This document shows positions 1,555 through 41,700 of a stretch of 42,957 bases of DNA, piece by piece. The notes below the pieces were generated by a model that did no database searches, was not told the DNA's origin, and saw only the letters and a list, made by a program, of their open reading frames with translations. This stretch comes from Octopus bimaculoides (lineage: Eukaryota). Made by a program: the position numbers and the translations under genes. The stretch lies in contig NC_068982.1 of assembly GCF_001194135.2 (NCBI RefSeq), forward strand, positions 124,740,413 through 124,783,369, given 5' to 3'. Numbering within the stretch: the stretch's first letter is position 1; every line of letters begins with the position of its first letter.

Positions 1555-2115
1555 CACGGTGGTGCACCAGCATGACCGCAGCCAAATTGGCTGAAACACA
1601 TAAATAAATAAATATATATGAAAACTATTCACTTCAGAATGAAGACATGACGTGACTTTAGCCACCATGTTATATATGTTTTTGTCTTTATTTATACTTA
1701 AAGCTCAGGTTTTTGCTTTCTATTCATAAAGCATGTATTGTGGCTGTGATTACATCGAGCACTTCCATGTATTTCTCTGTGATGTAACAAATGATAGATG
1801 TGTCTTATAGCTCAACAATGAGACATTCAAGTTGGTTATGCTTTTCTCATTTCTATAGCCTATTGTACCACTTCTCTACAATTATTACATGCCGTAAGAA
1901 AGACAGTAGTTACGTAAAATTTTCTTCTTTTAGCAATAATTTGTATCTTTGCCTTTATAGCTTACAATTTATGTAACGGTTCCTTGAAATTAGTGTTTAT
2001 TTTCTCTGTAGAACTGAATTTGATTGTTTTGTGGTTGTTTGGCACCAGATGATCCTAAACCACACAAAAATATTCCAACCGTGAACATCATTCGTTTTAT
2101 ACGGCATAGTGTACA

Positions 2116-2536
2116 TTTACTCTTTTACTCATTTACTCTTTTACTTGTTTCAGTCATTTGACTGCGGCCATGCTGGAGCACCACCTTTAGTCGAGCAAAT
2201 CGACCCCAGGACTTATTCTTTGGAAGCCTAGTACTTATTCTATCGTTCGCTTTTTGCCGAACCGCTAAGTTACGGGGACGTAAATACACCAGCATCGGTT
2301 GTCAAGCGATGGTGGGGGGACAAACACAGACACGCAAACACACATACATATATATATATACACACATATATACGACGGGCTTCTTTCAGTTTCTGTCTAC
2401 CAAATCCACTCACAAGGCTTTGGTCGGCCCGAGGCTATATTAGAAGACACTTGCCCAAGGTGCCGCGCAGTAGGACTGAACCCGGAACCATGTGGTTGGT
2501 AAGCAAGCTACTTACCACACAGCCACTCCTGCGCCT
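2116..2536 (-). mobile_element. Family B tRNA-derived SINE, full length (CORE-like segment, internal TA/TG microsatellite, (AAAGAGT)n tail)
   Basis: Reverse strand reads GGCGCAGGAGTGGCTGTGTGGTAAG...GGTTCCGGGTTCAGTCC...CCTTGGGCAAGTGTCTT; same sequence recurs at 10380, 17750, 23723, 33639, 34556, 38271. Confidence 0.9.
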
Positions 2537-2889
2537 TTGACAACGTTATACAATGTGTTCTTCTGATTTTAGACAACCGGTTATGATTTAGACGAGATAT
2601 GGTTGCTATCTATGGTTGCAAGTCCAACGATCACGTAGAAGCTCCCGCGTTAAACTAAGATTCTCTGCGTTACCAAATCTCCCTGCATTACAGGAGGATC
2701 CTTTGTTAGAGAAAGAGTCATATGACTGCAAATTCATTGTTTTGTTCTAAATTTAGCAGATCTGCAACATGGAGTTTGGGAAATAAAAGTCTTGGAAATA
2801 TTTTCCAGTTCAGCATTATCGATATTGGATATGAAATTTCGAGATGTATATTGTTTGATATCGTTTATGCTGGGATACCGCATTGAACA

Positions 2890-4227: not shown

Positions 4228-5126
4228 AGGACTCGAGATGGTACCTAATTTTTTTAAAATCGCGTAAGACTCCAGCAGGTAAAGTTAAATATCTTGTATT
4301 CGTCCTAAAAAACAAGGTTAGTATTAGCAAGAACATTGTCTTTTTTTTTTTTTATCTATTTCGAAAATAAACTTTCCCTCGATGTTGGCATGCATTTCTG
4401 TTCAGAGTTCATATATCCGAAACATAGAGTCCATTGTCCTCTGGACAACATGGCTATTTATATGTGTAGTTATCTGTATGGCAGATGCCAGATTTAGATA
4501 TTTTATCAGTATAATTATTTTAAAAAGAATATGAAATAGAATTCTGGTTTTATGAACCGAAAAGCCAATACTGAATTTCGAGAATTAAAAAAGAAATATG
4601 TATAAATAAAAAATAACTAAACAGTATTGTAATGTGATCTAAGTACTGATTATCAAATTATTGTAAGAAAATGGAGACAAAGGTGAAAGCTATTTCACAT
4701 ACTTCCACTATAAATATCCTACATCACTTCTCTAAAATATCCTACGCTACTTCTCTTGGTCTAAATGATAGCGGATCACTGTGGTACAACACAGACGGTC
4801 ACTGTTTCTTTTCTGGCTTCATTTAATAGTTATTATTTATGTTGTTGTGCAATTTATTGTAGGTCTTTGTTATTCGATAAAGTTGAAGTAACAATTTATC
4901 CCCTCTTTCACTTAAGGGAAAGTGGAATTGTACGAGCGGCGAGAAAAAAAATTAGTAAAATAAGATAAAATAAAATATGACTTGCTACTTAGTAGTATGC
5001 AGGGTTCTTTGTCTAGCATATTGTAACTGATGGCTGTTTATAAGAACGTTAATGTAAAAGGTAATTCGTCTTTTACACTTTCAGAAACACACAGACACGC
5101 ACACACACACACACACNNNNNNNNNN

Positions 5127-5160
<34 letters not shown>

Positions 5161-5393
5161 GTGTGTGTGTGAGTGTTTGTGTTTGTGTGTTTGTGTGGGC
5201 ATGTATAACATATTACATATACACTCAGGGACACAGCGACTCAAACATAGCTATATAGGCATGCATATGTATAAATATGCACTACACGTATAAGAACATA
5301 CATATGTAGAAATATACCCATGCATGGATACATGTACAATTTTACATAAGTCGTGCACGTGTGTATATATAGATGTATGTATGTATGTATGTA

Positions 5394-5395
<2 letters not shown>

Positions 5396-5487
<92 letters not shown>
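5396..5487. repeat. Long (TA)n microsatellite in a TA/TG/TATG-rich tract
   Basis: Direct reading. Confidence 0.95.
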
Positions 5488-5489
<2 letters not shown>

Positions 5490-5688
5490 ACATACATTAC
5501 ATTAATGTATATGGATCATATATCTTATGTTATGTTATATATGTATGAATGTATGCATGTATGTATGCATGTATATGTGCACATGATTGTATGTATAGGT
5601 GTACGCATATATCGATGTATGAATCTGTCTGTCTCTGTCTCTCTCTATATATATGTATACATACATACATATATACACACACACACAC

Positions 5689-5731
<43 letters not shown>

Positions 5732-9478: not shown

Positions 9479-10379
9479 TGTGTGTGTGTGTGTGTGTATA
9501 TANNNNNNNNNNNNNNNNNNNNNNNNNNNNNNNNNNNNNNNNNNNNNNNNNNNNNNNNNNNNNNNNNNNNNNNNNNNNTATATATATATACCGATTTCTA
9601 ACATTTTCACTCTTCCACAAAATTTTCTAAGATAACAAAGTCGGTTAAATCAACCAACTCCGGAAAGATGGATAGCAAATTTGCCTTTGGTGCGATTCGA
9701 ACTCAGACGGTAAAGAGACAAAACTAACTCCTGTAATACACTTTTTCTCCTGTACACAACTATTTCTCTTTTCCATTACTCTTTCGTAATATATAATAAT
9801 CAAACTTAGATACTGTTTTGTAATATTCTGCAAGTATCATAAAACTTGCTGGTCACACTAAAACTATGTGTAAGACGATAATAAATATATCTCCAAATAT
9901 CTATCGTATTTTCTCGTTTTATTTATATTATGCAAGCTACTGTTGCCTTAAGAAGACTATAAGCTATACGCAAACTTTGGCGGAAAAAATATGCGTTAAA
10001 TATTTGTATCTCTATGCGACAAGAAGTAAGGTTGTAGCGACACTAAATAAGCTTCTATTTACTTCCTTGATGGAAACTGCTTTAATGCTAACAATTGCTC
10101 AGATATTTCTGTATAGAAGAGCAAAATCTATTTTCTCTTGTAACTCAAATAGATAATAGACCATTGAGAAGGAAATAAAAGTGTTTCATATTAAGCATTC
10201 CAAATATTCTAAGAATGAAGTAAATATTTCCCTTCATTTCTGATGTTATGCATAACTCTTCCTAGCACCACAATTCTCTCTCTCACACACACACGTATGT
10301 ATGTATGTATGTATGTATGTACGTATGTATTATGTAAGTATGTATGTATGTGTGTGCGTGCGTGTGTGTGTATGTGTGT

Positions 10380-10545
10380 ATAGGCGCAGGAGTGGCTGTG
10401 TTGTAAGAAACTTGCTTCTCAACCACATGGTTCCGGGTTCAGTCCCACTGCGTGGTACCTTGGGCAAGTATCTTCTACTATAGCCTAGCGCCGACCAAAG
10501 CCTTGTGAGTAGATTTGGTAGACATAAACTGAAAAAAGCCCGTCG
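10380..10545 (+). mobile_element. Family B SINE 5' half, cut by gap
   Basis: taggcgcaggagtggctgtg...ggttccgggttcagtccc...ccttgggcaagt. Confidence 0.9.
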
Positions 10546-11802
10546 TATATATATATATATATATNNNNNNNNNNNNNNNNNNNNNNNNNNNNNNNNNNNN
10601 NNNNNNNNNNNNNNNNNNNNNNNNNNNNNNNNNNNNNNNNNNNNNNNNNNNNNNNNNNNNNNNNNNNNNNNNNNNNNNNNNNNNNNNNNNNNNNNNNNNN
10701 NNNNNNNNNNNNNNNNNNNNNNNNNNNNNNNNNNNNNNNNNNNNNNNNNNNNNNNNNNNNNNNNNNNNNNNNNNNNNNNNNNNNNNNNNNNNNNNNNNNN
10801 NNNNNNNNNNNNNNNNNNNNNNNNNNNNNNNNNNNNNNNNNNNNNNNNNNNNNNNNNNNNNNNNNNNNNNNNNNNNNNNNNNNNNNNNNNNNNNNNNNNN
10901 NNNNNNNNNNNNNNNNNNNNNNNNNNNNNNNNNNNNNNNNNNNNNNNNNNNNNNNNNNNNNNNNNNNNNNNNNNNNNNNNNNNNNNNNNNNNNNNNNNNN
11001 NNNNNNNNNNNNNNNNNNNNNNNNNNNNNNNNNNNNNNNNNNNNNNNNNNNNNNNNNNNNNNNNNNNNNNNNNNNNNNNNNNNNNNNNNNNNNNNNNNNN
11101 NNNNNNNNNNNNNNNNNNNNNNNNNNNNNNNNNNNNNNNNNNNNNNNNNNNNNNNNNNNNNNNNNNNNNNNNNNNNNNNNNNNNNNNNNNNNNNNNNNNN
11201 NNNNNNNNNNNNNNNNNNNNNNNNNNNNNNNNNNNNNNNNNNNNNNNNNNNNNNNNNNNNNNNNNNNNNNNNNNNNNNNNNNNNNNNNNNNNNNNNNNNN
11301 NNNNNNNNNNNNNNNNNNNNNNNNNNNNNNNNNNNNNNNNNNNNNNNNNNNNNNNNNNNNNNNNNNNNNNNNNNNNNNNNNNNNNNNNNNNTATATATAT
11401 ATATATATTGTGATGTAATTCTCAGCGCTTCTTTTGATAACTTATATATTTTGTATGGCATGAAAGTCGAATGAATAACATATTAGCATACTAGATAGTA
11501 AAAATATATCTATTATATTATTATATATCATCCTGTAGTCGCTTTTAACACAGATTTTACTTTGGTCAGTCAGTTTCTTATTCTTTGCATGTGTACATAT
11601 ACATACACATTAAAAGAAAGCAACCAGATAATATGTACATTGCATAGACAATCTATAAGCGGAACAGTAGAAATATGCAAGACTTTTCTCAAATTCAAAA
11701 TGTGATATTGTTTGTGTTATCTAAGTTTCGAAGAAAGAGCTTTGTATCTCTGTTAGAAATTAGCTCCTTTCTTACAGGATGACATCAAATAATGAAAGCC
11801 AG

Positions 11803-11843
<41 letters not shown>

Positions 11844-11914
11844 ATACATCTGTCTGTCTACCCATCTATTATATATACAAATATAAATATACATACATAC
11901 CTACACACATACTC

Positions 11915-11952
<38 letters not shown>

Positions 11953-12008
11953 NNNNNNNNNNGTGTGTGTGTGTGTGTGTGTGTCTGATAAATATACACA
12001 CACGTGTA

Positions 12009-17749: not shown

Positions 17750-17915
17750 GCAAACGTGGGCTAAGAAGTGAGCTAAGGGGTTTTCTTCTCAACCACATGA
17801 TTTCAGGTTCAGTCCCACTGCATAGCATCTTGTGCAAGTGTCTCCTACAATAACTTCGGGTCGAACAACGCTTTGTGAATAAATTTGGTAGACAGAAATT
17901 GAAAGAAGCCAGTTG
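17750..17915 (+). mobile_element. Family B SINE 5' half
   Basis: aaccacatgatttcaggttcagtcccactgc...gcaagtgtc...ggtagacagaaattgaaagaagcc. Confidence 0.8.
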
Positions 17916-18106
17916 TGCGTGTGTGTGTATGTGTGTTTAAAAATATAAAAGTGTATAGAATATTTCTATACACAAAGAGGTGACCTTTGACAGGACTCCT
18001 TACGTGCCAAGAAGACAAGTTAGAACCTAAACCACGAAAAAAAAAAAAAAGGATTCACGAGGCGCGCCGATTATAAGACTAGAACAAACAAAAAAATGAA
18101 TTAGTT

Positions 18107-18178
18107 AATCCCGGACTCGAGTTTCGCCATTAATTTCCAAATAAACTAATTTGGGATCTGTGTCTCATCAGCGAGATC
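18107..18178 (-). ncRNA. Minimal type I hammerhead ribozyme, copy 1
   Basis: Minus strand GATCTCG CTGATGA GACA-[cagat-CCCAAAT-tagttt-ATTTGG-aaattaa]-TGGC GAAA CTCGAGTC/CGGGATT. All core positions intact, G10.1-C11.1, palindromic ACTCGAGT helix III, GUC triplet, 7-bp helix I. Confidence 0.8.
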
Positions 18179-18616
18179 GTTAATTAATGAATAATTATGT
18201 AGTTGCAAATACGTACCGAAAACACGTGCTGCGCATAAGAGCTATATCTTTATCCATTATGGATTCGAACTTAGTGCGGGAGCGTAAATATATAGTCCAG
18301 CAGTAAATAAATAAATTTAAAACTGTCTCCTATACAACCTCTGAATTATAAATATTACTATTGTAAATATGAGGGTAATAAATTAAAATAATCTATTATC
18401 AGTGGTTAGCATACATAAATAAAACTCATAAAGCATAGCATATTTTTAAAAATATAAAAGTGCATAGAATATTTCTATACACAAAGAGGAGACCTTTGAC
18501 AGGACTCCTTACATGCTAAAGAGGCCAGTTAAAACCTAAACCACACACACACAAAAAAGGGGGATTCATGAGGCACGCCGATTATAAAACTAGAACGAAC
18601 AAAAAATGAGTTAGTT

Positions 18617-18684
18617 AATCCCAGACTCGAGTTTCGCCATTAATTGCTAAATAAACTAATTTGGGATCTGTGGCTCATCAGCGA
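18617..18684 (-). ncRNA. Minimal type I hammerhead ribozyme, copy 2
   Basis: Minus strand TTCG CTGATGA GCCA-[...]-TGGC GAAA CTCGAGTC/TGGGATT. Core intact, perfect 4-bp helix II base; helix I weakened by a 16-nt deletion relative to copy 1. Confidence 0.75.
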
Positions 18685-19320
18685 ATAATTATGATAGTTA
18701 TATATATATATATATANNNNNNNNNNNNNNNNNNNNNNNNNNNNNNNNNNNNNNNNNNNNNNNNNNNNNNNNNNNNNNNNNNNNNNNNNNNNNNNNNNNN
18801 NNNNNNNNNNNNNNNNNNNNNNNNNNNNNNNNNNNNNNNNNNNNNNNNNNNNNNNNNNNNNNNNNNNNNNNNNNNNNNNNNNNNNNNNNNNNNNNNNNNN
18901 NNNNNNNNNNNNNNNNNNNNNNNNNNNNNNNNNNNNNNNNNNNNNNNNNNNNNNNNNNNNNNNNNNNNNNNNNNNNNNNNNNNNNNNNNNNNNNNNNNNN
19001 NNNNNNNNNNNNNNNNNNNNNNNNNNNNNNNNNNNNNNNNNNNNNNNNNNNNNNNNNNNNNNNNNNNNNNNNNNNNNNNNNNNNNNNNNNNNNNNNNNNN
19101 NNNNNNNNNNNNNNNNNNNNNNNNNNNNNNNNNNNNNNNNNNNNNNNNNNNNNNNNNNNNNNNNNNNNNNNNNNNNNNNNNNNNNNNNNNNNNNNNNNNN
19201 NNNNNNNNNNNNNNNNNNNNNNNNNNNNNNNNNNNNNNNNNNNNNNNNNNNNNNNNNNNNNNNNNNNNNNNNNNNNNNNNNNNNNNNNNNNNNNNNNNNN
19301 NNNNNNNNNNNNNNNNNNNN

Positions 19321-19405
<85 letters not shown>

Positions 19406-19724
19406 CAACTTTCCCCTCCTCTCAAAATTGCTGACCTTGTCCCGAAATTAGAAAGAATATTTTAACGAAGAATAGCAAACAGGAAGCTCGTAGAATTGAA
19501 AAAAAAAGACATTTAAATATTTTATGTAATATGTATAAATCATATACTGCAAATATTTATAATTACCATGATTTTAGTAGCATTTTAAAAATACTTGTCA
19601 ATTAGTTTACGAGGCTGTTCGTTGTTGATCGATCGGCTAGATGCTAGAAACAGCAGCCAATATTCCTTGGAAGTATATCCCAGCGTTTTAGGATCTATAT
19701 CTTTTTAAAAAACACGTACTAGTT

Positions 19725-19912
19725 GGTCATTCGACCAGTTAAAAATAGCAGCCAAAATTTCCTGATATCACGTCCCAGCGGTTTACAGAAGAAGGACACA
19801 TTAGATAATCTGGTCATGGATTCAGTGAGGCCAAGAAAAGAAACAAAATGATCAAGGCTGGAATGCGTTTGATTGGAGAACTGACCTTGGAGGAGGGGTG
19901 GGGCTAAACAAC
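19725..19912 (+). mobile_element. Family E retroposon
   Basis: ggtcattcgacc..taaaaatagcagccaaa...aaggacacattagataat...gctggaatgcgtttga...ggggctaaacaac. Confidence 0.7.
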
Positions 19913-19917
19913 AGCCC

Positions 19918-19967
19918 CCAACAACTACTTCTACCACCACCACTGCTGTCACTATAAAAACCACCAT

Positions 19968-20003
<36 letters not shown>

Positions 20004-20390
20004 AGCCACCACCACTATCACCACTACTTCGTGTAGTAATACTACAACTACTATCACCGCTACCACTTCTTTTAATACTGATACAACTACCACAACCATC
20101 ATCACCACTACAACTTCCACTACCTCTACCAGTACCAGCACCAGCACCACCACTGCCACCACTAACACAATCACCACCACCACCACCACCACCACCACTA
20201 CTACTATTACTACTACTACTACTACTACAGTCACCACCACTATCACCACTACTTCGCTATTACTACGACCACTACCACTTCTTTTAATACTGCTACAACT
20301 ACCACAGCCATCATCACCACTAGAACAACCACTACCAGCACCAGCACCAGCACCACCACTGCAACCACTACCACCACCACCACCATCAGC
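19918..20390. repeat. Compound (ACT/ACC/AGC)n trinucleotide tract with internal higher-order duplication
   Basis: Direct reading; block ctatcaccactacttcg...accacttcttttaatactg.tacaactaccaca.ccatcatcaccacta occurs twice. Confidence 0.9.
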
Positions 20391-21310
20391 TATTTTCATG
20401 ATTTACGTCAACAGGTATGCATAAAATAAATTGTAAATTAATAACAGTTTTAAAATTCATGTAATTTTAACATATATTTGTGTGCTGTTTAGCGGTTTAT
20501 ATGTATTTGTATTGTATAAATCTATAATATAGTTGTAGCAGCTATTAAAATGTCGTTAGCAACCGTCTGAGATTTATCTTCCTTAACAGCCAGCTGATGC
20601 GCGCGTGCGCGTGCGTGCGTGTGTATTTTCAATGTGAATTACATTAGTCTTCTATCAACAAGCAATGCTCTTACAGTATCCTGTAAAATCCTGCTCAGAT
20701 CTAGCCTAGCATTGAAGATAAAACACAGTTTGTTTTGAAGAAATATCAATAACCTTCCTTATACTATGAACCGTACATCTGTGATGTTATGCTATGTTAT
20801 ATATATATATATGTGTGTATTCCTTTTTTTTATTCTTTCTTTATCTCGTAAATAGATGTAGCAGTTGATGGGATCAATAATTTCTAGTGGATTACAGGAA
20901 TGATGATTAAATGAATACGAAAAAGATTAAAAAAAAAAGAAACCCTCAAAACAAAGCAAAAAATAGATAAAAATAAAATGAAACAAGAAACAAACATCGT
21001 GGAGTGTGTTGCCAATTAATTAGGTGTTAGTGACGTCAGTCGGAAGAAAGCCTTGTAAGGAATGCTAACAGATGTAANNNNNNNNNNNNNNNNNNNNNNN
21101 NNNNNNNNNNNNNNNNNNNNNNNNNNNNNNNNNNNNNNNNNNNNNNNNNNNNNNNNNNNNNNNNNNNNNNNNNNNNNNNNNNNNNNNNNNNNNNNNNNNN
21201 NNNNNNNNNNNNNNNNNNNNNNNNNNNNNNNNNNNNNNNNNNNNNNNNNNNNNNNNNNNNNNNNNNNNNNNNNNNNNNNNNNNGGACCTTTATTTGTCTC
21301 TCTATCTGCA

Positions 21311-23722: not shown

Positions 23723-24030
23723 CAGTCCCACTGTGTGGCACCTTGAGCAAGTGTCTTCTACTATAGCCACAGGTCAACTAAAACCTTGTGAGTGGATTTG
23801 GTAGGCAGAAACTGAAAGAAGCCCGTCGTATATGTGTGTGTGTGTGCTCGCGCGCGTGTCCATACAGCTTGACAACTGGTGTTGGTGTGTTTACGTCCCC
23901 GTAAATTAGCGCTTCAGCAAAAGAGATTAATAGAATAAGTACTAGGCTTTTAAAAAATCCTTGGACAGAGCCGCAGGCTGCTGCATGGCTGCAGTCAACT
24001 GACTGAAACAAGTAAAAGAATAAAAGAATA
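23723..24030 (+). mobile_element. Family B SINE, 5'-truncated
   Basis: cagtcccactgtgtggcaccttgagcaagtgtcttc...gactgaaacaagtaaaagaataaaagaata. Confidence 0.9.
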
Positions 24031-27325: not shown

Positions 27326-29383
27326 TATCTCTCCATATGTCACGTCCTCGATATTTCCGCTGGGCCAGTAGTAGAGTCGACAGTTATATATGTCTGCTCG
27401 TAACTACATAGGCTCTTGAAGCAACATGTGAAACCGTAGTACAGTCCACCAAGTCAGATCCATCCTAGAGTGGCGACTAAGCTTTTATCTACAGAAAATT
27501 TTGACCAACTGAATGTATTGAATAACATAGTCATTGCGACGGTATCCATGCCTTTACACAGTGATATAAAGGAAGAGAAACAGAAAAGAACCCAGACGTT
27601 CATCTAGAACTAGAAGGACAAAAGTACCATAATGTATCATTTTCTCCATTTTTCCAATATCTTAACCACTTCCATCTGCATTGTCATATTTCTGTATTTA
27701 TACAAGTTTTATCTTTCACTACAAAAGGGAGTTGTCAGTGTAATATAAACAATATCTAATTTGCAACAAATATGACAAAAATCTGAAAAAATACAAGAAT
27801 CAAATAATATACAACTAACACAACTTGAACCTGTTGCACATGATTTTATGTGCGTTCTTATTAGATCAATTTTTTTTTTTATTTGAAATATTTTGCTCCT
27901 GCTAAGTGTAGCTATAAGTACATCGTGACATGTGCTCATTGTAATTTCAGTCAATATCTTCTATTTTATCTTACTTCTCATGTTTTCGTCTTAATTACAT
28001 CCTGGTTAGTCTAATTAATTTATTCAACTCAAGAAGAGACTATTGTAAAATGAAATAATAAAAACATTTTTATGGAGTAAGTACTTAATTTCTTTTTTTT
28101 TTTTTTTTTNNNNNNNNNNTTTTTTTTTTTTTTCTTCTCTTTTTGCAGTCATAAGTGTAATATTTTTCACGACTAAAATAGCAAATTGAATAAAGTGCCT
28201 TCTGCATAATTGCTTTAAATTTTGACACAAGGACAGTTATTTTAGGAGGACGTGGAACGTCAGTCGATTTCATCGACTCCAGTACTTGACTGGTACTTTA
28301 TTTTATCGATCCTGAAAGGTAGCTTGTACATAATTGCTTCAAATTTTGACCCAGGTCCAGATATTTTCGAGAGAAGTGGAGTTCAGTCGACTACATCAAC
28401 TCCAGTACTTGACTGTCATTTTATTTTACCGACCCCGAAAGGTACAATCTAAATAATATAGACACAATACCTCATTCAGAAATATGAAATCTAGTTTTTA
28501 GTCGAAGACGGTGAATTGATAGAGTCATTAGAGCATCGAATAGATTATCTCGCGGTATTTGTTCTAGCTGTTTGTGCTTGAAGTTAGAACTCTGCAGATG
28601 TCCTTTTGACATCCATAGAAAGTATTAATTTGTGGCGGATGATTGGCGGAACTGCTAGAACGTAGGGAGGCTTGTCTTCCAGTGGCTATTTCGACTCTTT
28701 GTATCGATATAAGTGCGAAGCTGTATCGACAACCTTTCTCTTAGACATCACCGGTAATACGGAGAGAATAGAATTGCGTGCGTAAGCAATTGTTAGCTTT
28801 ACGCTCGTGCGCGCACTACACACATACACATACACACACACACGCAAGATTTGACTAGGTCTACACTTTGATAGGGAGGAATTTTCCGGATGCAGAAATC
28901 AAGGGTCAGCTATGATCGGAGAAAGCCTTGTTTCCTGACGTTTGAGATATCAATTACACTGCAATCATAAGTATAACATTTTTCACGACTGAGGCGGCGA
29001 GCTGGCAGAAACGTTAGCACGCCGGGCGAAATGCTTAGCGGTATTTTGTCTGCTGCTTCCGCCGAGGTCGACTTTGCCTTTCATCCTTTCGGGGTCGATT
29101 AAATAAGTATCAGTTACGCACTGGGGTCGATATAATCGACTTAATCCGTTTGTCTGTCCTTGTTTGTCCCCTCTGTGTGTAGCCCCTTGTGGTCAGTAAA
29201 GAAATAAGAAACGTTAGCACGCCGGGCGAAATGCTTAACGGTATTTCGTCTGTGTGAGTTTTGATTTATTGGTAATTATTATTGGAGTGCGTCTGTATAG
29301 TAAGTGCAAGTTTCTATTGACTATTTTTGTGTTATTTCCTGTTATAGTTATTTGTGTGATAATCTTCGTTCGAAAACTATCGT

Positions 29384-30082
29384 GTGTTTTCCCCTGTGGG
29401 AGAAACATTAATTGCTGGCAAGATTCCGAAAAGTGTAACTTCGTCTGGCGAAGAGTCGTCAACCGACAGGGTGGCAAAAAAAATTGAAAGTTTAATATTT
29501 GGCGATATTTCGGATTCTTCTGAAAATGAATTTCCCCAGCCATCAATGTGTACTATTGCAAAGAGGAATATTGACGTGAAAAGCCTTCAAAGAGAAGAAA
29601 ATAAACAAAACAGAAGTTTTGCGTCGGCAGGTGGAGGTGGAACCCGCCAGCTGTCGACAAACAAAAATGACCTGATAAAGTGCAAAAATATGATAAATGA
29701 AGACGGTGTTGTGAAAGTTCAACCCCCGGAAGAACTATTAATGTTAGAAAAAAGAAAAACAATTATTTTTAAATCTTACTGTCTAAAAGGAAATAGAATT
29801 GATCGAATGAGCGAAGAGAAAGTTGAGAAGTGCTTGAAACCCATCTGGCAGGATATCACATACCTAGCCAGAGGGAAGAAGTTTGGTACTATCGAAGTAC
29901 GATCAACAGATATAGAAACTGCAGAAATGCACTCAGTTAAGTCTTTAGAAACGGAGGACGGCGTTTTAATTCCAATATATATGGGAATGAGGACGTCAAA
30001 GATACGTATACCAAGGGTCCCACCTCAAGTTGACACTATGTGGTTGATGGCGGCAGTCCTGGCAAAAAAAAATGGAAGATAG
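29384..30082 (+). pseudogene. ORF1-like N-terminal fragment of the Tx1-type element
   Basis: 232-aa non-repetitive ORF at the ORF1 position, ending LIPIYMGMRTSKIRIPRVPPQVDTMWLMAAVL; assignment rests on position and motif resemblance. Confidence 0.6.
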
Positions 30083-30117
30083 TATAACACTCCTTCAGGC
30101 TACCGTCACAGAAAAGG

Positions 30118-31177
30118 CACCTGGGTTGGCAAGTCGATGCCTTCAGACAGCGTTGTTGGGCGCTGGACAGAGGGACCGGTTAACTTGCTGGGATTCTGGT
30201 TTGGATCAGGCCTCCAGATAGAGAAGAACTGGACGGAGGTTTCGAACAGATTGGCTGCAGTAGTCAAGACCTGGTCTTGGCGGTGACTATCCCTGAAAGG
30301 GAGGGCGGAGGTGGCCAATGTGTTCAACGCATCGGTCTTTACCTACCGCCTGACCGTCGTTCCCTGTCCGGATTCGTGGTTGATCAGGTTGGAGAGACAG
30401 CTCTTTCGCTTTCTGTGGAAGGGCATGTCGCCACTTGTGAAACGCTCTGTCTGTTGTCAAAAGCCGTTAAAGTGGGGTTTAGGGATACCTTGGTTAATGA
30501 TGCGCAGGCATGCGTTGAGGGTGAGACATCTCTGGATTCTCCTGGATGGTGAACGGGTGTGGTCCCTGCTGGCCAAAAAATTGTTCCCCGAGTTCAAAAG
30601 TTTTTGCGAACAGGAAGCCCGGTGTTCTCGTAGACCGACGTCGAGTGAATGGCACAAAGAGTGTTGTAAAGCCTTCCTGCTATTCCGGCCTTCGGGCAAC
30701 GGTGGGGGCTCTACACGAATTTTATATACTTGGTTGGTAGAATCTGAATGTGACAATGGCCTGGGGGCGACTCTAGGTCTCGGGTATATTCAACTGAGCA
30801 GCCTGTTCCATCGTACATTCGGGTTGAGAACGTTGGACAACTTCCAAACGTCCTTGACCTGGCAACGTTACTGAGGTGCCTTGCCCGTTTGGGATAAGCT
30901 CGCAAGACATGGTAAGCGTCAGTCTCCGACCTGTCCAAGATTCGGGGGAGACAGGGAAACCGTCCCTCACGCTATTGTCCAGTGTCTAGAGATATCTGAA
31001 ATGTGGGTTTATGCTGAACACCTATTGTCCGGCGAAGGAAGAGTACGGCTGTCGACTGAGTCAATTATAAAAATTGACCCACCGGAAGTTTCAACGAACG
31101 AAGGTAAGAATTGTTTTCTCATGGTTGTGGCAATAGCGAAAGAGGCAGTATGGAAGACTAGGATGAAAGGGAATTAA
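30118..31177 (+). pseudogene. C-terminal part of L1/Tx1 ORF2 (post-RT region and CCHC-type knuckle) with premature stops
   Basis: LLGFWFG..NW..W..R*LSLKGRAEV..YRLTVVPCP..LFRFLWKG..VKR..GLGIP and CPRF..ETVPHAIVQC (C to F substitution); in-frame TGA at about 30284 and at 30872. Confidence 0.85.
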
Positions 31178-31822: not shown

Positions 31823-32247
31823 TTTATGTGTGTATTCTCATGCATATAGTTGCATATCTAGACATGCTCATATATATATAAATGATAAACTTCTGGAAAG
31901 TTTTACAGATTTTTACAGTTTCAGTGATAGATTGGATCTGTAGTTTTCGAATTAGCTTTCTCCTTTCTGATTTTGAGACGCCTAATTTGTCAAGATTGGT
32001 ATATAGGCAGTGTGTTATATATACTAGGTCTCCAATAATTACAGGCATAAACCTGAACTTGTAATCTGGATAGAGTAACTGCGTATTTCTTAATAATTCA
32101 GCGTAGGTATTCTCTTTTTCATTTATCTTCAGCTTTATGTTAACATCTGCTGGGCAGCTAATTTCCACAACTGTACATAGTTTTTCTTCTCAATCCCAAA
32201 TCATTATATAAGGCCTGTTGGGCTTACATTTTATTGAGGTCTTCTAT
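31823..32247 (-). mobile_element. 5'-truncated RLE-type non-LTR retrotransposon fragment embedded in (CATA)n
   Basis: Minus strand [50 protein letters not shown]...PVIIG (degenerate PD..ExSxP..K..Y RLE motif); (TATG)n on both flanks. Confidence 0.75.
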
Positions 32248-32473
32248 TTATGTATGTATGTATGTATGTATGTATGTATGTATGTATGTATGCATGTATG
32301 TATGTATGTATGTACGTACGTATGTATGTATGTATGTATGTATGTATGTACGTACGTATGTATGTATGCATGTATGTATGTATGCATGTATGTATGTATG
32401 TATGCATGTATGTATGTACGTATGTATGTACGTATGTATGTATGTATGTATGTATGCATGTATGTATGTATGT
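32248..32473. repeat. (TATG)n tetranucleotide array with TACG/TGCA variants
   Basis: Direct reading. Confidence 0.95.
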
Positions 32474-33638
32474 NNNNNNNNNNNNNNNNNNNNNNNNNNN
32501 NNNNNNNNNNNNNNNNNNNNNNNNNNNNNNNNNNNNNNNNNNNNNNNNNNNNNNNNNNNNNNNNNNNNNNNNNNNNNNNNNNNNNNNNNNNNNNNNNNNN
32601 NNNNNNNNNNNNNNNNNNNNNNNNNNNNNNNNNNNNNNNNNNNNNNNNNNNNNNNNNNNNNNNNNNNNNNNNNNNNNNNNNNNNNNNNNNNNNNNNNNNN
32701 NNNNNNNNNNNNNNNNNNNNNNNNNNNNNNNNNNNNNNNNNNNNNNNNNNNNNNNNNNNNNNNNNNNNNNNNNNNNNNNNNNNNNNNNNNNNNNNNNNNN
32801 NNNNNNNNNNNNNNNNNNNNNNNNNNNNNNNNNNNNNNNNNNNNNNNNNNNNNNNNNNNNNNNNNNNNNNNNNNTGTTGGGCTTACATTTTATTGAGGTC
32901 TTCTATTTATGTATGTATGTATGTATGTATGTATGTATGTATGTATGTATGCATGTATGTATGTATGCATGTATGTATGTATTCTCGGTTCAGCATTCAA
33001 TGAATTATTATTGTCTTCTCACTAAAGTTATACCAAATAATGATGGTTAGGACGATGTGAATGAGGCTAAGGCGCATAAGGATGACATCAGGAGGAAATG
33101 TATGATGATGACGATGATGATGATGAGGCGGAGAAGGGTTAGGGTGAGAATGACGAGTATGACAGTGTATTATTTATTTATAACTGCACTGTCACTCGCA
33201 CATAATTTCGTGTAAAATTCCTGGTGTCAATACAGTTATTCTCACTAACCCTATCCTTGTTGTCATCGACATCGTATCACCATCATCATCCTCCACCTCT
33301 TCCTCCTCCTCCTCCTCCTCATCATCATTGTCATCATCAACGTCGTTATTTGCATCAAAATCGTTTCTGTCATCATTGTTGTAGTCATTGATGACATTTT
33401 CCCATTGTTCTTGTCACTCACAACCACCTTCGACCTTAGTCCCAACTATTTTTAAGGCCAAAGTATACTGTTCACATAATGGAAATTTAATTGCGGAATA
33501 GCTTTGTTTTAATAGCAACAATCTAGATTTCTCATTAACCTTGAGTGTTTCGAAAAAAAAAAAGAAAAGAAAAGAAAATAGAAGCAAATTACACCACCCA
33601 TCACACATACGAATAAATATTATGGCACATTAAATTAT

Positions 33639-33802
33639 GCGGCAGGTGTGATTGTCTGGTAAGAAATTTGCTTCCCATCTACATGGTTCCGGGTTCAATT
33701 CTACTGCGTGGCACCTTGGCCAAATATCTTCTTCTATAACTCCGGACCTACCAAAGCCTTGTAAGTGGATTTGGTGGACGGAAAGTAAACGAAGCCCTTC
33801 GT
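33639..33802 (+). mobile_element. Family B SINE 5' half
   Basis: catggttccgggttcaattctactgcgtggcaccttggccaaat...gtggatttggtggacggaaag. Confidence 0.8.
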
Positions 33803-34555
33803 ATATATATATATATATATATATATNNNNNNNNNNNNNNNNNNNNNNNNNNNNNNNNNNNNNNNNNNNNNNNNNNNNNNNNNNNNNNNNNNNNNNNNNN
33901 NNNNNNNNNNNNNNNNNNNNNNNNNNNNNNNNNNNNNNNNNNNNNNNNNNNNNNNNNNNNNNNNNNNNNNNNNNNNNNNNNNNNNNNNNNNNNNNNNNNN
34001 NNNNNNNNNNNNNNNNNNNNNNNNNNNNNNNNNNNNNNNNNNNNNNNNNNNNNNNNNNNNNNNNNNNNNNNNNNNNNNNNNNNNNNNNNNNNNNNNNNNN
34101 NNNNNNNNNNNNNNNNNNNNNNNNNNNNNNNNNNNNNNNNNNNNNNNNNNNNNNNNNNNNNNNNNNNNNNNNNNNNNNNNNNNNNNNNNNNNNNNNNNNN
34201 NNNNNNNNNNNNNNNNNNNNNNNNNNNNNNNNNNNNNNNNNNNNNNNNNNNNNNNNNNNNNNNNNNNNNNNNNNNNNNNNNNNNNNNNNNNNNNNNNNNN
34301 NNNNNNNNNNNNNNNNNNNNNNNNNNNNNNNNNNNNNNNNNNNNNNNNNNNNNNNNNNNNNNNNNNNNNNNNNNNNNNNNNNNNNNNNNNNNNNNNNNNN
34401 NNNNNNNNNNNNNNNNNNNNNNNNNNNNNNNNNNNNNNNNNNNNNNNNNNNNNNNNNNNNNNNNNNNNNNNNNNNNNNNNNNNNNNNNNNNNNNNNNNNN
34501 NNNNNNNNNNNNNNNNNNNNNNNNNNATATATATATATATATATATATATATACA

Positions 34556-34697
34556 CTACGAGCGTCTGTCAGTTTCCTTCTACCAAAATCTATTCACAAG
34601 GCTTTAGTCGGCCCGAGACTATAGTAGAAGAGTGGGACTGAACCCAGAACCATGTGGTTGGGAAGCAAGCTTCTTGCCAAACAACCACGCCTGCGCC
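34556..34697 (-). mobile_element. Family B SINE 5' half with internal deletion
   Basis: gtcggcccgagactatagtagaaga|gtgggactgaacccagaaccatgtgg. Confidence 0.8.
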
Positions 34698-34831
34698 TTT
34701 GTCAGATTTTATCGGAACTTCATATTCAAGTTGGTTTGATATCCTCATTCATAATCACAAGAATCATCCTTTAATTTCACCTTCGTTAAAATTTTCGAGA
34801 GAATTATTTTAGTTTGTTAATAATTGATCAC

Positions 34832-38270: not shown

Positions 38271-38638
38271 ATAGGAGTGACTGTGTGGTAAGACGCTTGC
38301 TTCCCAACCACATGGTTTCGGGTTCAGTCCAACTGCGTGGAACCTTGGGCAAGTGTCTTCTACTATAGCCTCGGGCCGACCAAAGCCTTGTGAGTGGATT
38401 TGTTGACGAAAACTGAATGAAGCCCATCGTATATATGTATATATATGTATGTGTGTGTATATGTTTGTGTGTCTGTGTTTGTCTCCCCAACATCGCTTGA
38501 CAACCAATGCTGGTGTGTTTACGTCCCCGTAACATAGCGGTTCGGCAAAAGAGACCGATAGAATAAGTACTAGGCTTACAAAGAATAAGTCCTGGGGTCG
38601 GTTTGCTCGACTAAAGGTGGTGCTCCATGACTGAAATA
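38271..38638 (+). mobile_element. Family B SINE, near full length (duplicated across the gap at 38833-39105)
   Basis: Matches the reverse complement of 2116-2536. Confidence 0.9.
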
Positions 38639-39246
38639 NNNNNNNNNNNNNNNNNNNNNNNNNNNNNNNNNNNNNNNNNNNNNNNNNNNNNNNNNNNNNN
38701 NNNNNNNNNNNNNNNNNNNNNNNNNNNNNNNNNNNNNNNNNNNNNNNNNNNNNNNNNNNNNNNNNNNNNNNNNNNNNNNNNNNNNNNNNNNNNNNNNNNN
38801 NNNNNNNNNNNNNNNNNNNNNNNNNNNNNNNNAAAACTGAATGAAGCCCATCGTATATATGTATATATATGTATGTGTGTGTATATGTTTGTGTGTCTGT
38901 GTTTGTCTCCCTACCATTGCTTGACGACCGATGCTGGTGTGTTTACATCCCCGTAACTTAGTGGTTCGGCAAAAGAGACCGGTAGAATAAGTACCAGGCT
39001 TGCAAAGAATAAGTTCTGGGATTGATTAGTTCGACTAAAGGCGGTGCTCCAGCATGGCTGCAGTCAAATGACTGAAATAAATAAAATAACAAAAAGAATA
39101 AAAGAGTATATATATATGAACTAAGAAAAACGTCTGCATATGGTCACTCGCTCTGCCAGAAATGGCAGGTAAATATCATTCATATCATACCTTTGGATCT
39201 TAGAAGAGAAGAACGATGATTTGTGATTAATATCAGATGGGATGTA

Positions 39247-40853: not shown

Positions 40854-41463
40854 CCTTACTTTGCTTAATATATTGGAAATGGAATGCAGATTTCGTAATG
40901 AAGTGGTAGAGTCAATAGAGAATCTAATAGAATTCCTCAAGGAATTTATTCCGGCTCTTTTCATTTCGAAAGCAAATCCCATTATTATTTTACTGGGAGA
41001 GTAGACTTAATCAGGTTACCCGATGTAATTTTATCATCTTCCAGCATTTGTGTTTTTAGCGGAGTCTACTCTGTTGCAATTATTTCGGCCACGTCGGTTT
41101 AACGATACTTTCTTCTCTCTCACTCACAGGCTTTGGAGATACTTGCCTCTTGACAAAAAGACTATATTTCCTATTATTAGTAAATTAGATGCAGGAGGAC
41201 AAAAGTTAACAAATGCATCAATAATTTCATCGTTTATGAAAGAAATTGCGAGACGAAATCTCCAAGGGATTTAACAGGTGCTATACCAGAGGAACCAGAT
41301 TTCAAAATTATATGCTATATATACAACGTGGCTCATGCAAAAATAGAGAGGAATAAAGAATTAAAAAAAAAAAAGAAAAGAAAAACATTGCTAATGTAAA
41401 GGAGGTTTCGTAGAATGTCGAATAAGTTCAATTACCACGAGAACAGGAAAATTTGGGGATTTT

Positions 41464-41537
41464 ATCACATAGAAGACATCCGTTCTCATTCGATCACCAA
41501 AGTTAAGCAATGTAGAGCCTAGTTAGTACCTAGATGG
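41464..41537 (+). pseudogene. 5S rRNA-derived segment (about nt 13-86 of 5S, including box A, IE and the start of box C)
   Basis: ATCAC..GTTCTCATTCGATCACCAAAGTTAAGCAATGTAGAGCCTAGTTAGTACCTAGATGG aligns without gaps to the metazoan 5S sequence I recall (roughly 80% by eye); many differences are CpG-type transitions. Confidence 0.8.
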
Positions 41538-41700
41538 ACAGCCAATTGACAGCATCATCAGAGCGTCGGATAGATTATTTTGCAGTATTCGTTCTGGCTT
41601 TCTACACACTAAGTTCAAATCCGACATAAGTCAACTTTACCTTTCATTTTTTGGTGATCGATAGATAAAATAAAGTACCAGTCCTGTACCGAAGTTGACT
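41536..41700 (+). mobile_element. Degenerate family A SINE abutting the 5S segment
   Basis: ggacagccaattgacagcatc..gagcgtcgga..gcagtatt..aagttcaaatcc..aagtcaactttacctttcat..gataaaataaagtacca. Confidence 0.65.

What the first reader, a model, noticed from the sequence alone, without database searches (positions are those of the whole stretch)
17936..18693. Paired minimal hammerhead ribozymes in direct repeats defining a 510-nt self-excising unit (retrozyme-like, possible circRNA)
Seen: two ~250-bp direct repeats flank a ~245-bp unique spacer. On the minus strand each has a complete hammerhead core (CUGAUGA...GAAA, G10.1-C11.1, GUC triplet) and the self-complementary helix III ACUCGAGU. Predicted cuts at 18624/18623 and 18114/18113 release a 510-nt non-coding monomer. 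Established: minimal type I hammerheads with palindromic helix III occur in Penelope-like element terminal repeats and in metazoan retrozymes, cleave best as dimers formed between tandem copies, and retrozyme monomers can circularise. Inference: the repeat-spacer-repeat layout resembles plant LTR retrozymes but uses a type I core, and the monomer is longer than the metazoan retrozyme units I recall. Helix II is unusually extended (internal loop plus CCAAAU/AUUUGG helix) and contains GAUCCCA, which can pair with the arm 3' of the cleavage site (U/CGGGAUU), suggesting a fold switch. A gap starts at 18717 and may hide more copies.
Basis: partly seen in the sequence, partly recalled or inferred. 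Interest (0 to 1): 0.85.

Follow-up and report, generated by a model that had tools for sequence, protein, structure and literature searches.

The report
Decayed hammerhead-ribozyme retrozyme repeat, 510-nt unit
This is one and a half head-to-tail copies of a small non-coding mobile repeat carrying a self-cutting hammerhead RNA motif, a kind of element already well described in animal genomes, and this copy looks old and partly broken.

Summary
On the minus strand there are two type I hammerhead motifs exactly 510 nt apart. The downstream one (18177-18108) scores 35.4 bits against Rfam Hammerhead_1, just over the 34-bit threshold. The upstream one (18686-18618) scores 26.3 bits, below it. Both keep the full catalytic core, the G10.1-C11.1 pair, the GUC cleavage triplet and the palindromic ACUCGAGU.

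The layout is about 1.5 tandem units of a 510-nt, 32.5% GC, non-coding repeat sitting in a TG/TA microsatellite. It is not an LTR-spacer-LTR element: there is no primer binding site and no polypurine tract.

This fits the known metazoan non-LTR retrozymes, which are non-autonomous derivatives of Penelope-like elements. Published unit lengths run from 51 to 972 bp, and the cave-cricket pDo500 hammerhead satellite is 463-505 bp, so 510 nt is not unusual.

The locus looks decayed. The two units are only 88% identical, and the upstream hammerhead has lost the 5' arm of helix I. The hammerhead fold is not the predicted minimum-energy fold, and the hammerhead is not significantly better conserved than the rest of the repeat (p = 0.12).

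No other copy was found in the window or in the searchable DNA collections, none of which holds animal genomes. Family size, expression, circularity and any link to Penelope-like elements are therefore untested.

Verdict: a new member of a known kind, of low to moderate interest.

The parts
17936..18702 (-). Whole element: about 1.5 head-to-tail units. A 5'-truncated upstream unit (18702 to 18446) is followed by a full 510-nt unit (18445 to 17936).
   Evidence: Direct-repeat families D2, D4 and D5 with offsets of 509-511; pairwise alignment A1; blastn of the unit against the window.
18108..18177 (-). Downstream type I hammerhead (B). Core intact, helix I of 6-7 bp, long imperfect helix II (37-nt insert), helix III of 2 bp plus a UCGA loop. 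Cleavage after C at 18114.
   Evidence: Rfam RF00163, 35.4 bits against a gathering score of 34. Helix I duplex -7.0 kcal/mol. Constrained fold.
18618..18687 (-). Upstream type I hammerhead (A). Core, helix II (with a better 4-bp base: G-C, C-G, C-G, A-U) and helix III are intact, but the 5' strand of helix I is lost to an indel. Cleavage after C at 18624.
   Evidence: Rfam RF00163, 26.3 bits, below gathering. Helix I duplex only -1.4 kcal/mol. Indel visible.
18114..18623 (-). Predicted 510-nt RNA between the two GUC cleavage sites. 32.5% GC, no stop-free stretch longer than 44 codons.
   Evidence: Coordinates read; GC and folding; stop-free stretches.
18175..18444 (-). Part of the unit present only once at this locus. 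AT-rich, non-coding, and contains a B-box-like AGTTCGAATCC at 18271-18261.
   Evidence: No tRNA found by ARAGORN.
17936..18013 (-). 3'-terminal block of the unit (second copy at 18445-18522). It is better conserved than the middle of the repeat and contains two hairpins: GGAGUCC...GGUC(U/A)CC and the perfect palindrome GUGUAUAGAA-AUA-UUCUAUACAC. It is a candidate recognition module for reverse transcriptase (inference).
   Evidence: 72/78 identical against 77/95 in the middle of the repeat, Fisher p = 0.046. Palindrome I22 at 17951-17973 and 18460-18482.
17914..17935 (.). (TG)n-type microsatellite abutting the 3' end of the element. It belongs to the internal microsatellite of a tRNA-derived SINE-like repeat at 17768-17935(+).
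18703..19403 (.). (TA)n, then an N gap (18717-19320), then (TA)n (19321-19362) and (TG)n (19363-19403), on the 5' side of the element. Together with the microsatellite above, this places the element inside a compound TA/TG microsatellite.

Best explanation
This is an old insertion of about 1.5 tandem units of a non-autonomous, non-coding retroelement that carries a type I hammerhead. In the current literature that is a metazoan 'non-LTR retrozyme', a derivative of the pseudo-LTR region of Penelope-like elements (PLEs).

The mechanism below is inferred from the family and is not shown here. An active master copy is transcribed through two or more units. Each hammerhead cuts after GUC. The cut is made either in cis or, because the 2-bp helix III with its palindromic loop is weak, as a double hammerhead in which the ACUCGAGU segments of two tandem copies pair into an 8-bp helix III. 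This releases 510-nt monomers with 5'-OH and 2',3'-cyclic phosphate ends. A host RtcB-type tRNA ligase circularises them. A PLE reverse transcriptase/endonuclease supplied in trans then copies the RNA into a microsatellite target, producing greater-than-unit-length head-to-tail copies with arbitrary ends.

At this locus the element is probably a relic. The two units have diverged to 88% identity, and the upstream ribozyme has lost its helix I 5' arm. Only the downstream ribozyme can fold on its own. Release of a 510-nt RNA would require the downstream core to cut the upstream site in the double-hammerhead arrangement.
For: - Two Hammerhead_1 matches lie in register 510 nt apart on one strand. 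Both have an intact core, the G10.1-C11.1 pair and a GUC site.
- The repeat is head-to-tail with unit offsets of 509-511, and homology runs past the supposed 'LTR' edge.
- The unit has 32.5% GC and no coding capacity.
- There is no PBS or PPT.
- No Pfam domain was found in the flanking stop-free stretches of 62 residues or more between about 11.5 and 25.5 kb, nor in ten other large ORFs, apart from a weak zf-RVT match in a LINE fragment 11 kb away.
- The ACUCGAGU self-duplex is 8 bp at -12.1 kcal/mol.
- The downstream 5' arm pairs with both 3' arms (-7.0 and -6.1 kcal/mol), whereas the upstream 5' arm pairs with neither (-1.4).
- The element lies inside a TA/TG microsatellite.
- Literature: type I hammerheads in short, low-GC tandem repeats are non-LTR retrozymes that are expressed as circRNAs and ligated by RtcB rather than by the ribozyme (PMC7229834). 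PLE hammerheads sit in pseudo-LTRs, have long helix II and short helix I, and are thought to work as dimers (PMC4209133). PLEs form partial tandems and show an insertion bias for (TA)n and (CA)n microsatellites (PMC8557442). Retrozyme consensus lengths are 51-972 bp and group with PLE pseudo-LTRs (bioRxiv 10.64898/2026.07.22.740005).
Against: - Only one locus is available. No second copy exists in the 43-kb window and none was found in the viral, prokaryotic-genome or metagenome contig collections. Mobility, copy number and any PLE partner are therefore unshown.
- The hammerhead fold is far from the predicted minimum free energy (-8.3 against -16.2 kcal/mol downstream, -3.3 against -17.4 upstream).
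- An internal GAUCCCA out-competes helix I for the 3' arm.
- Local folds are no better than shuffled sequence, and the monomer fold has a z-score of only about -1.8 in either polarity.
- The hammerhead is not significantly better conserved than the rest of the repeat (61/65 against 149/173 identical, p = 0.12).
- No target-site duplication can be read, because both flanks are microsatellite and one is a gap.
- No PLE ORF lies nearby.
- The downstream match clears the Rfam threshold by only 1.4 bits.
Confidence: 0.65

Rival explanations
1. It is the edge of a longer hammerhead-bearing satellite array, comparable to newt satellite 2 or cave-cricket pDo500, with further units hidden in the 604-N gap. 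The units would have been amplified mainly by DNA-level mechanisms (unequal crossing-over) rather than by retrotransposition.
For: The arrangement is head-to-tail and breaks off a few bases before the gap. pDo500 has a unit of 463-505 bp with a hammerhead and a proposed double-hammerhead mode (PMC2837043). The 12% divergence between neighbouring units is typical of old arrays.
Against: The upstream unit ends in (TA)n before the gap, and the far side of the gap is also (TA)n. Eleven of the 13 gaps in this scaffold are bordered by simple repeats, so the gap is most simply an unassembled microsatellite. The downstream end stops cleanly at a (TG)n after 1.5 units. In the current literature such satellites are themselves classed as retrozymes, so this rival differs from the best explanation mainly in the mode of amplification.
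Confidence: 0.15
2. It is the remnant of an autonomous Penelope-like element. The two pseudo-LTRs with their hammerheads survive, and the RT/GIY-YIG ORF between them has been deleted.
For: PLE hammerheads lie in both pseudo-LTRs, and PLE hammerheads have a long helix II and a short helix I. PLEs form partial tandems and prefer microsatellite targets.
Against: The 245-270 bp between the repeats shows no stop-free stretch longer than 44 codons, and no RT or endonuclease domain was detected nearby. The repeat register is exactly that of a simple tandem of one short unit.
Confidence: 0.1
3. It is an animal counterpart of the plant LTR retrozyme: LTR, spacer, LTR, mobilised by an LTR retrotransposon, but with a type I hammerhead.
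For: Two repeats of about 240 bp, each with a hammerhead, flank about 250 bp of unique sequence.
Against: There is no PBS next to the upstream repeat, no PPT before the downstream repeat, and no TG...CA repeat termini. Homology runs beyond the nominal repeat edge, as expected of a tandem repeat. The hammerhead is type I and the GC content is 32.5%, whereas plant retrozymes have type III hammerheads and more than 55% GC.
Confidence: 0.03
4. It is a chance hammerhead-like motif in a segmental or assembly duplication, with no ribozyme activity.
For: The downstream match clears the Rfam threshold by only 1.4 bits, and the upstream one fails it. The hammerhead fold is not the thermodynamically preferred one. 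The hammerhead is not more conserved than the rest of the repeat. The source is a draft scaffold with 13 gaps.
Against: All 11 invariant core positions are present, together with G10.1-C11.1, A15.1-U16.1, GUC, a palindromic loop 3 and a helix I of 6-7 bp. The window-wide E-value is 2.5e-5 over 4227 families. The two copies differ at 12% of positions and by indels, so they are not a read-level assembly duplication. The context (tandem, low GC, non-coding) is the one in which type I hammerheads typically occur.
Confidence: 0.07

Closest known systems
Metazoan non-LTR retrozymes (Cervera and de la Pena 2020, PMC7229834; Li, Clavereau and Pollet 2026 preprint, 10.64898/2026.07.22.740005)
   Same: Type I hammerhead on one strand. 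Short non-coding unit in head-to-tail copies. Low GC (32.5%). No LTR, PBS or PPT. Helix III of 2 bp closed by a palindromic tetraloop, as described for invertebrate retrozyme hammerheads. Unit length within the published 51-972 bp range.
   Different: Only 1.5 units are seen, and only at one locus. Helix II is much longer (39 nt including the closing pair) than the canonical 4 bp plus loop, so the usual loop 1-loop 2 tertiary contact cannot be recognised. One of the two ribozymes is defective. Expression as circRNA is unknown.
Hammerheads in the pseudo-LTRs of Penelope-like elements (Cervera and de la Pena 2014, PMC4209133; Craig et al. 2021, PMC8557442)
   Same: A long, imperfect helix II and a shorter helix I. 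In the downstream copy the second position of stem II is a mismatch (A opposite G), comparable to the unpaired 5' nucleotide of stem II described for PLE hammerheads. The palindromic helix III region suits dimeric action. Partial-tandem architecture and a microsatellite target.
   Different: There is no RT/GIY-YIG ORF in or near the element. The hammerhead has a true helix III with a loop, rather than the loop-less 'min-HHR'. Sequence relationship to any PLE terminus could not be tested.
pDo500 satellite of Dolichopoda cave crickets and newt satellite 2 (PMC2837043)
   Same: A tandem unit of about 500 bp carrying a hammerhead that processes multimeric transcripts into monomers. Both single- and double-hammerhead modes have been proposed.
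   Different: Those are abundant long arrays, conserved across species, with shown cleavage. Here there are 1.5 diverged units and no comparative or experimental data.
Plant LTR retrozymes (Cervera et al. 2016, PMC4918200)
   Same: A non-autonomous, non-coding retroelement whose hammerheads delimit an RNA that can circularise.
   Different: Plant retrozymes have type III hammerheads inside true LTRs, a tRNA-Met PBS, a PPT, more than 55% GC and Gypsy-type mobilisation. None of these features is present here.

Membership tests
Hammerhead ribozyme, type I (Rfam RF00163) | Score at or above the curated gathering threshold (34 bits) | tested here: met
   The downstream copy at 18177-18108 scores 35.4 bits. 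The upstream copy at 18686-18618 scores 26.3 bits and does not meet the threshold.
Hammerhead ribozyme, type I (Rfam RF00163) | Conserved core: C3 U4 G5 A6 N7 G8 A9, G12 A13 A14, the A15.1-U16.1 pair, a non-G residue at position 17, and the G10.1-C11.1 pair | tested here: met
   Both copies read CUGAUGA-G...C-GAAA-C-UCGA-G-U-C. There are no substitutions in the core between the copies.
Hammerhead ribozyme, type I (Rfam RF00163) | Three helices around the core, with helix I open (type I topology) | tested here: inconclusive
   The downstream copy has a helix I of 6-7 bp (-7.0 kcal/mol), an imperfect helix II of about 12-13 pairs and a helix III of 2 bp plus tetraloop. The upstream copy has essentially no helix I (-1.4 kcal/mol). 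The hammerhead fold is not the minimum-energy fold for either copy.
Hammerhead ribozyme, type I (Rfam RF00163) | Site-specific self-cleavage after position 17 | not testable with these tools
   This needs in vitro transcription of monomeric and dimeric constructs.
Metazoan non-LTR retrozyme | Type I hammerhead within head-to-tail repeats of a short non-coding unit | tested here: met
   Offsets of 509-511 between copies. About 1.5 units. No stop-free stretch longer than 44 codons inside the unit.
Metazoan non-LTR retrozyme | Low GC content (below 45-50%) and absence of LTR, PBS and PPT | tested here: met
   GC is 32.5%. The best PBS match has 4 of 12 mismatches and is misplaced, and no purine run exceeds 6 nt.
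Metazoan non-LTR retrozyme | Multiple dispersed or tandem copies in the genome (a repeat family) | not testable with these tools
   There is no other copy in the 43-kb window. The available DNA collections hold no animal genomes, and five pattern scans found nothing.
Metazoan non-LTR retrozyme | Expression as linear and circular monomeric RNA | not testable with these tools
Penelope-like element (autonomous) | An ORF encoding a telomerase-like reverse transcriptase and a GIY-YIG endonuclease | tested here: not met
   There is no ORF in the element. Pfam finds no domain in the flanking stop-free stretches of 62 residues or more between about 11.5 and 25.5 kb. Ten other large ORFs gave only a weak zf-RVT match in a LINE-like fragment at 30.9 kb.
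Penelope-like element (non-autonomous derivative) | Sequence similarity to the pseudo-LTR or 3' end of an autonomous PLE in the same genome | not testable with these tools
   Neither the source genome nor Repbase is available. The 3'-terminal block at 17936-18013 is the candidate region to compare.
Plant-type LTR retrozyme | Type III hammerhead in true LTRs, a tRNA-Met PBS, a PPT and a 4-bp target-site duplication | tested here: not met
   The hammerhead is type I. No PBS or PPT is present. A target-site duplication cannot be read, because both flanks are microsatellite and one is a gap.

The most novel reading that the evidence does not exclude
The unit may represent an undescribed invertebrate retrozyme lineage (possibly cephalopod or mollusc; the organism was not verified). 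In this reading its hammerhead carries a 37-nt helix II extension containing a decoy (GAUCCCA) for the helix I 3' arm. The RNA would then toggle between a cleavage-competent hammerhead fold, formed co-transcriptionally or as a dimer, and a cleavage-resistant fold that protects the 510-nt circular monomer. This would be a built-in switch, analogous to the single/double hammerhead regulation of viroid-like RNAs.
Probability: 0.08. Interest if true: 0.5.

Novelty: new member of a known kind. Interest (0 to 1): 0.27.

Why it matters
If the family proves abundant and expressed in the source organism, it would add one more lineage to the catalogue of animal hammerhead retrozymes. It would also supply a natural 510-nt circRNA scaffold with an atypically long helix II. 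That would be mildly useful for studying how hammerheads derived from Penelope-like elements work without the canonical loop-loop contact. As it stands, this is a single decayed locus of a well-described class of element. It does not open a new question.

Tried and rejected
- **Relatives elsewhere.** I ran exact-pattern scans with the conserved hammerhead and 3'-block sequences: viral contigs, genome contigs twice and metagenome contigs twice. All were empty. These collections hold no animal genomes, so the absence says nothing about family size.
- **Source organism.** A protein search with the LINE-like ORF at 30311-30874 gave a single 60%-identical hit on a 722-bp contig of assembly GCA_024449705.1. 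A literature search for that accession found nothing relevant. The organism stays unidentified. The SINE sequence and the microsatellite-rich draft scaffold remind me of octopus assemblies, but that is recollection, not a test.
- **Protein-space search with ORFs from inside the unit.** I considered this as a way to reach other copies. I rejected it because the stop-free stretches are 51 codons or fewer (44 or fewer wholly inside the unit) and differ between the two copies. The window's own LINE ORF was also absent from the database, so the chance of success did not justify the cost.
- **SINE continuation test.** I asked whether the element splits a SINE, which would have given an empty-site comparison. 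The sequence after the gap (19400-19700) shows no similarity above shuffled controls to the SINE 3' half, so there is no such proof of insertion.
- **tRNA or Pol III origin of the single-copy segment.** There is a B-box-like AGTTCGAATCC, but ARAGORN finds no tRNA. Three T-runs of 5 or more per unit on the hammerhead strand would terminate Pol III. I treat the motif as chance or degenerate.
- **Other ribozymes or a hammerhead of opposite polarity.** Rfam searches at gathering and at E-value thresholds found none.
- **Thermodynamic support for the hammerhead, the fold switch or a rod-like monomer.** None of the folds is distinguishable from shuffled sequence beyond a z-score of about -1.8.
Full report

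Yes. Reading the minus strand gives, at 18177-18108, AUCUCG-CUGAUGA-G[37 nt]C-GAAA-C-UCGA-G-UC|CGGGAU. At 18687-18618 it gives UAUUCG-CUGAUGA-G[37 nt]C-GAAA-C-UCGA-G-UC|UGGGAU.

An Rfam 15 covariance scan of the whole window at gathering thresholds returns a single hit. It is Hammerhead_1 (type I) at 18177-18108(-), with 35.4 bits against a threshold of 34 and E = 2.5e-5. With relaxed thresholds the upstream copy appears at 26.3 bits (E = 8e-4 locally; 0.027 window-wide). No other hammerhead and no other ribozyme class is found on either strand.

The direct repeats are confirmed at 17936-18174 and 18445-18684, in three gapless segments with offsets of 509, 510 and 511 and identities of 83-94%. 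Overall identity is 88%.

**2. Anatomy**

The two copies are not LTR-like blocks with defined ends. Homology continues upstream of the nominal repeat edge, through an indel of 5-16 nt depending on the alignment, to about 18702. There the sequence turns into (TA)n and then a 604-N gap.

At the other end both copies run to ...CACUUUUAUAUUUUUAAA. After that, the upstream copy continues into the single-copy segment, and the downstream copy meets a (TG)n tract at 17935.

The simplest description is therefore 1.5 head-to-tail units: a 5'-truncated unit (18702 to 18446) followed by a complete 510-nt unit (18445 to 17936).

The unit has these properties:
- It is 32.5% GC.
- It has no stop-free stretch above 44 codons.
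- It carries no PBS. The best match to the tRNA-iMet PBS has 4 of 12 mismatches and is not next to a repeat end.
- It carries no polypurine tract. The longest purine run is 6 nt.

The 78-nt 3'-terminal block of the unit is better conserved between the copies than the middle of the repeat (72/78 against 77/95 identical, p = 0.046). It contains two hairpins, one a perfect 10-bp palindrome (I22). Non-autonomous PLE-type elements are reported to share 3' ends with their autonomous partners. This block is therefore my candidate for the reverse-transcriptase recognition module. That is inference from two copies only.

**3. The ribozymes**

All core positions are identical in the two copies.

Helix III is A15.1-U16.1 and C15.2-G16.2, closed by the palindromic loop UCGA. 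This is the format described for invertebrate type I hammerheads. The 8-nt ACUCGAGU is self-complementary and forms an 8-bp duplex of -12.1 kcal/mol between two copies. A double-hammerhead is therefore feasible, as proposed for newt, cave-cricket and PLE hammerheads.

Helix II is unusual. It spans 39 nt and folds as G-C, (A.G or C-G), C-G, A-U, an internal loop, G.U, A-U, U-A, another loop, and then CCAAAU/AUUUGG closed by UAGUUU. PLE hammerheads are also described as having long helix II, short helix I and an unpaired base at the 5' start of stem II. No loop 1-loop 2 tertiary contact can be recognised.

The downstream helix I is 6-7 bp (-7.0 kcal/mol). In the upstream copy the indel has removed the 5' strand, and the best duplex is -1.4 kcal/mol and out of register. 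The downstream 5' arm can pair with the upstream 3' arm (-6.1 kcal/mol). In a double-hammerhead, the downstream core could therefore still cut the upstream site. This is inference.

Energetically the hammerhead fold is not favoured. It is -8.3 against a free minimum of -16.2 kcal/mol for the downstream copy, and -3.3 against -17.4 for the upstream copy. However, none of these local folds differs from dinucleotide shuffles (z between -0.8 and +0.3). The 510-nt monomer reaches only z of about -1.8, linear or circular, and the same in the opposite polarity. The 'switch' is therefore a possibility, not a finding.

**4. Conservation and age**

The hammerhead, from CUGAUGA through the 3' arm, is 61/65 identical between the copies. 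The rest of the repeat is 149/173 identical. The difference is not significant (Fisher p = 0.12).

Tandem units made in one retrotransposition event should start out identical. A divergence of 12% plus several indels therefore points to an old insertion, or to a heterogeneous multimeric template. Together with the broken upstream ribozyme, this suggests a relic rather than an active master copy.

**5. Surroundings**

The window is a draft eukaryotic scaffold with 13 N gaps. Eleven of the gaps are bordered by simple repeats.

The 3' end of the element abuts the (TG)n of a tRNA-derived SINE-like repeat at 17768-17935(+). That family has about nine copies or fragments in the window and an internal TA/TG microsatellite. 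On the other side lie (TA)n, the gap, (TA)n and (TG)n. The element therefore sits inside a compound TA/TG microsatellite. This matches the microsatellite insertion bias reported for several PLE clades, and it also prevents any target-site duplication from being read.

I tested whether the SINE resumes after the gap, which would have given an empty-site argument. It does not.

No reverse transcriptase or GIY-YIG domain was detected in the flanking stop-free stretches of 62 residues or more between about 11.5 and 25.5 kb, nor in ten other large ORFs tested. The only RT-related signal is a LINE-like fragment at 29.4-31.2 kb (weak zf-RVT).

A B-box-like AGTTCGAATCC lies in the single-copy segment. 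ARAGORN finds no tRNA, and three T-runs of 5 or more per unit on the hammerhead strand argue against Pol III read-through.

**6. Comparison with what is known**

Type I hammerheads inside short, low-GC, non-coding tandem repeats are the defining picture of metazoan non-LTR retrozymes. [quoted passage not shown] A 2026 preprint places them as non-autonomous derivatives of PLE pseudo-LTRs and reports consensus lengths of 51-972 bp. The cave-cricket pDo500 hammerhead satellite has units of 463-505 bp.

The plant LTR-retrozyme features were tested and not met.

Membership of the non-LTR retrozyme class is met for every feature testable from one locus. It remains open for copy number, PLE relatedness and circRNA expression. 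These could not be tested, because none of the accessible DNA collections contains animal genomes and five pattern scans were empty.

**7. Verdict**

The retrozyme-like interpretation is essentially right, but the novel embellishments are unsupported. The feature is a new, probably decayed member of a known kind of element. Interest is low to moderate. The only mildly unusual traits are the long helix II and the internal decoy for helix I, and both need comparative or experimental data before they mean anything.

Noticed in passing
window 17768-17935(+), 2100-2560(-), 10382-10564(+), 23723-24030(+), 33642-33826(+), 34527-34704(-), 38273-38627(+), 38834-39114(+): An abundant tRNA-derived SINE-like repeat of about 460 bp. 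It has a tRNA-like head (GGTTCAGTCCCAC T-arm-like box), an internal TA/TG microsatellite and a conserved 3' half of about 225 bp. Several copies run into assembly gaps at the microsatellite.
   Followed up: partly
window 29363-31177(+): A LINE-like retrotransposon fragment. It comprises a 232-aa ORF, a 187-aa ORF resembling the region after the RT domain, and a 98-aa ORF with a weak zf-RVT match (E = 9e-4, below the Pfam cut-off). The only database relative is a 60%-identical 217-aa product on a 722-bp contig of GCA_024449705.1.
   Followed up: partly
window 41452-41571(+): A full-length 5S rRNA-like match just under the Rfam threshold (36.6 against 38 bits, E = 4.5e-4). It could be a 5S pseudogene or the head of a 5S-derived SINE.
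   Followed up: no
window 18261-18271(-): A B-box-like AGTTCGAATCC inside the single-copy part of the hammerhead unit, on the ribozyme strand. There is no tRNA fold, and T-runs nearby would terminate Pol III.
   Followed up: yes
window gaps at 1227, 5117, 9503, 10565, 11953, 12575, 13671, 18717, 28110, 32474 and 33827: Eleven of the 13 N gaps are bordered by microsatellite or other simple repeats. Gaps in this assembly therefore mostly mark unassembled simple sequence rather than hidden complex sequence.
   Followed up: yes
window 5089-5706, 10284-10379, 11866-11995, 32262-32977: There are many sub-threshold matches to the mir-297, mir-3149, mir-1277, mir-466 and sno_ZL1 models. All lie on TG/TA/TATG microsatellites and are composition artefacts, not RNA genes.
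   Followed up: yes
window 19722-20402(-): A 227-codon stop-free stretch encoding a valine-rich low-complexity sequence with no Pfam match. I judge it to be a simple-repeat tract rather than a gene.
   Followed up: partly
window 31827-32189(-): A 121-codon stop-free stretch (...EISCPADVNIKLKINEKENTYAELLRN...) with no Pfam hit. From memory it resembles the conserved C-terminal tails of uncharacterised retroelement ORFs common in marine invertebrates. This was not tested.
   Followed up: no
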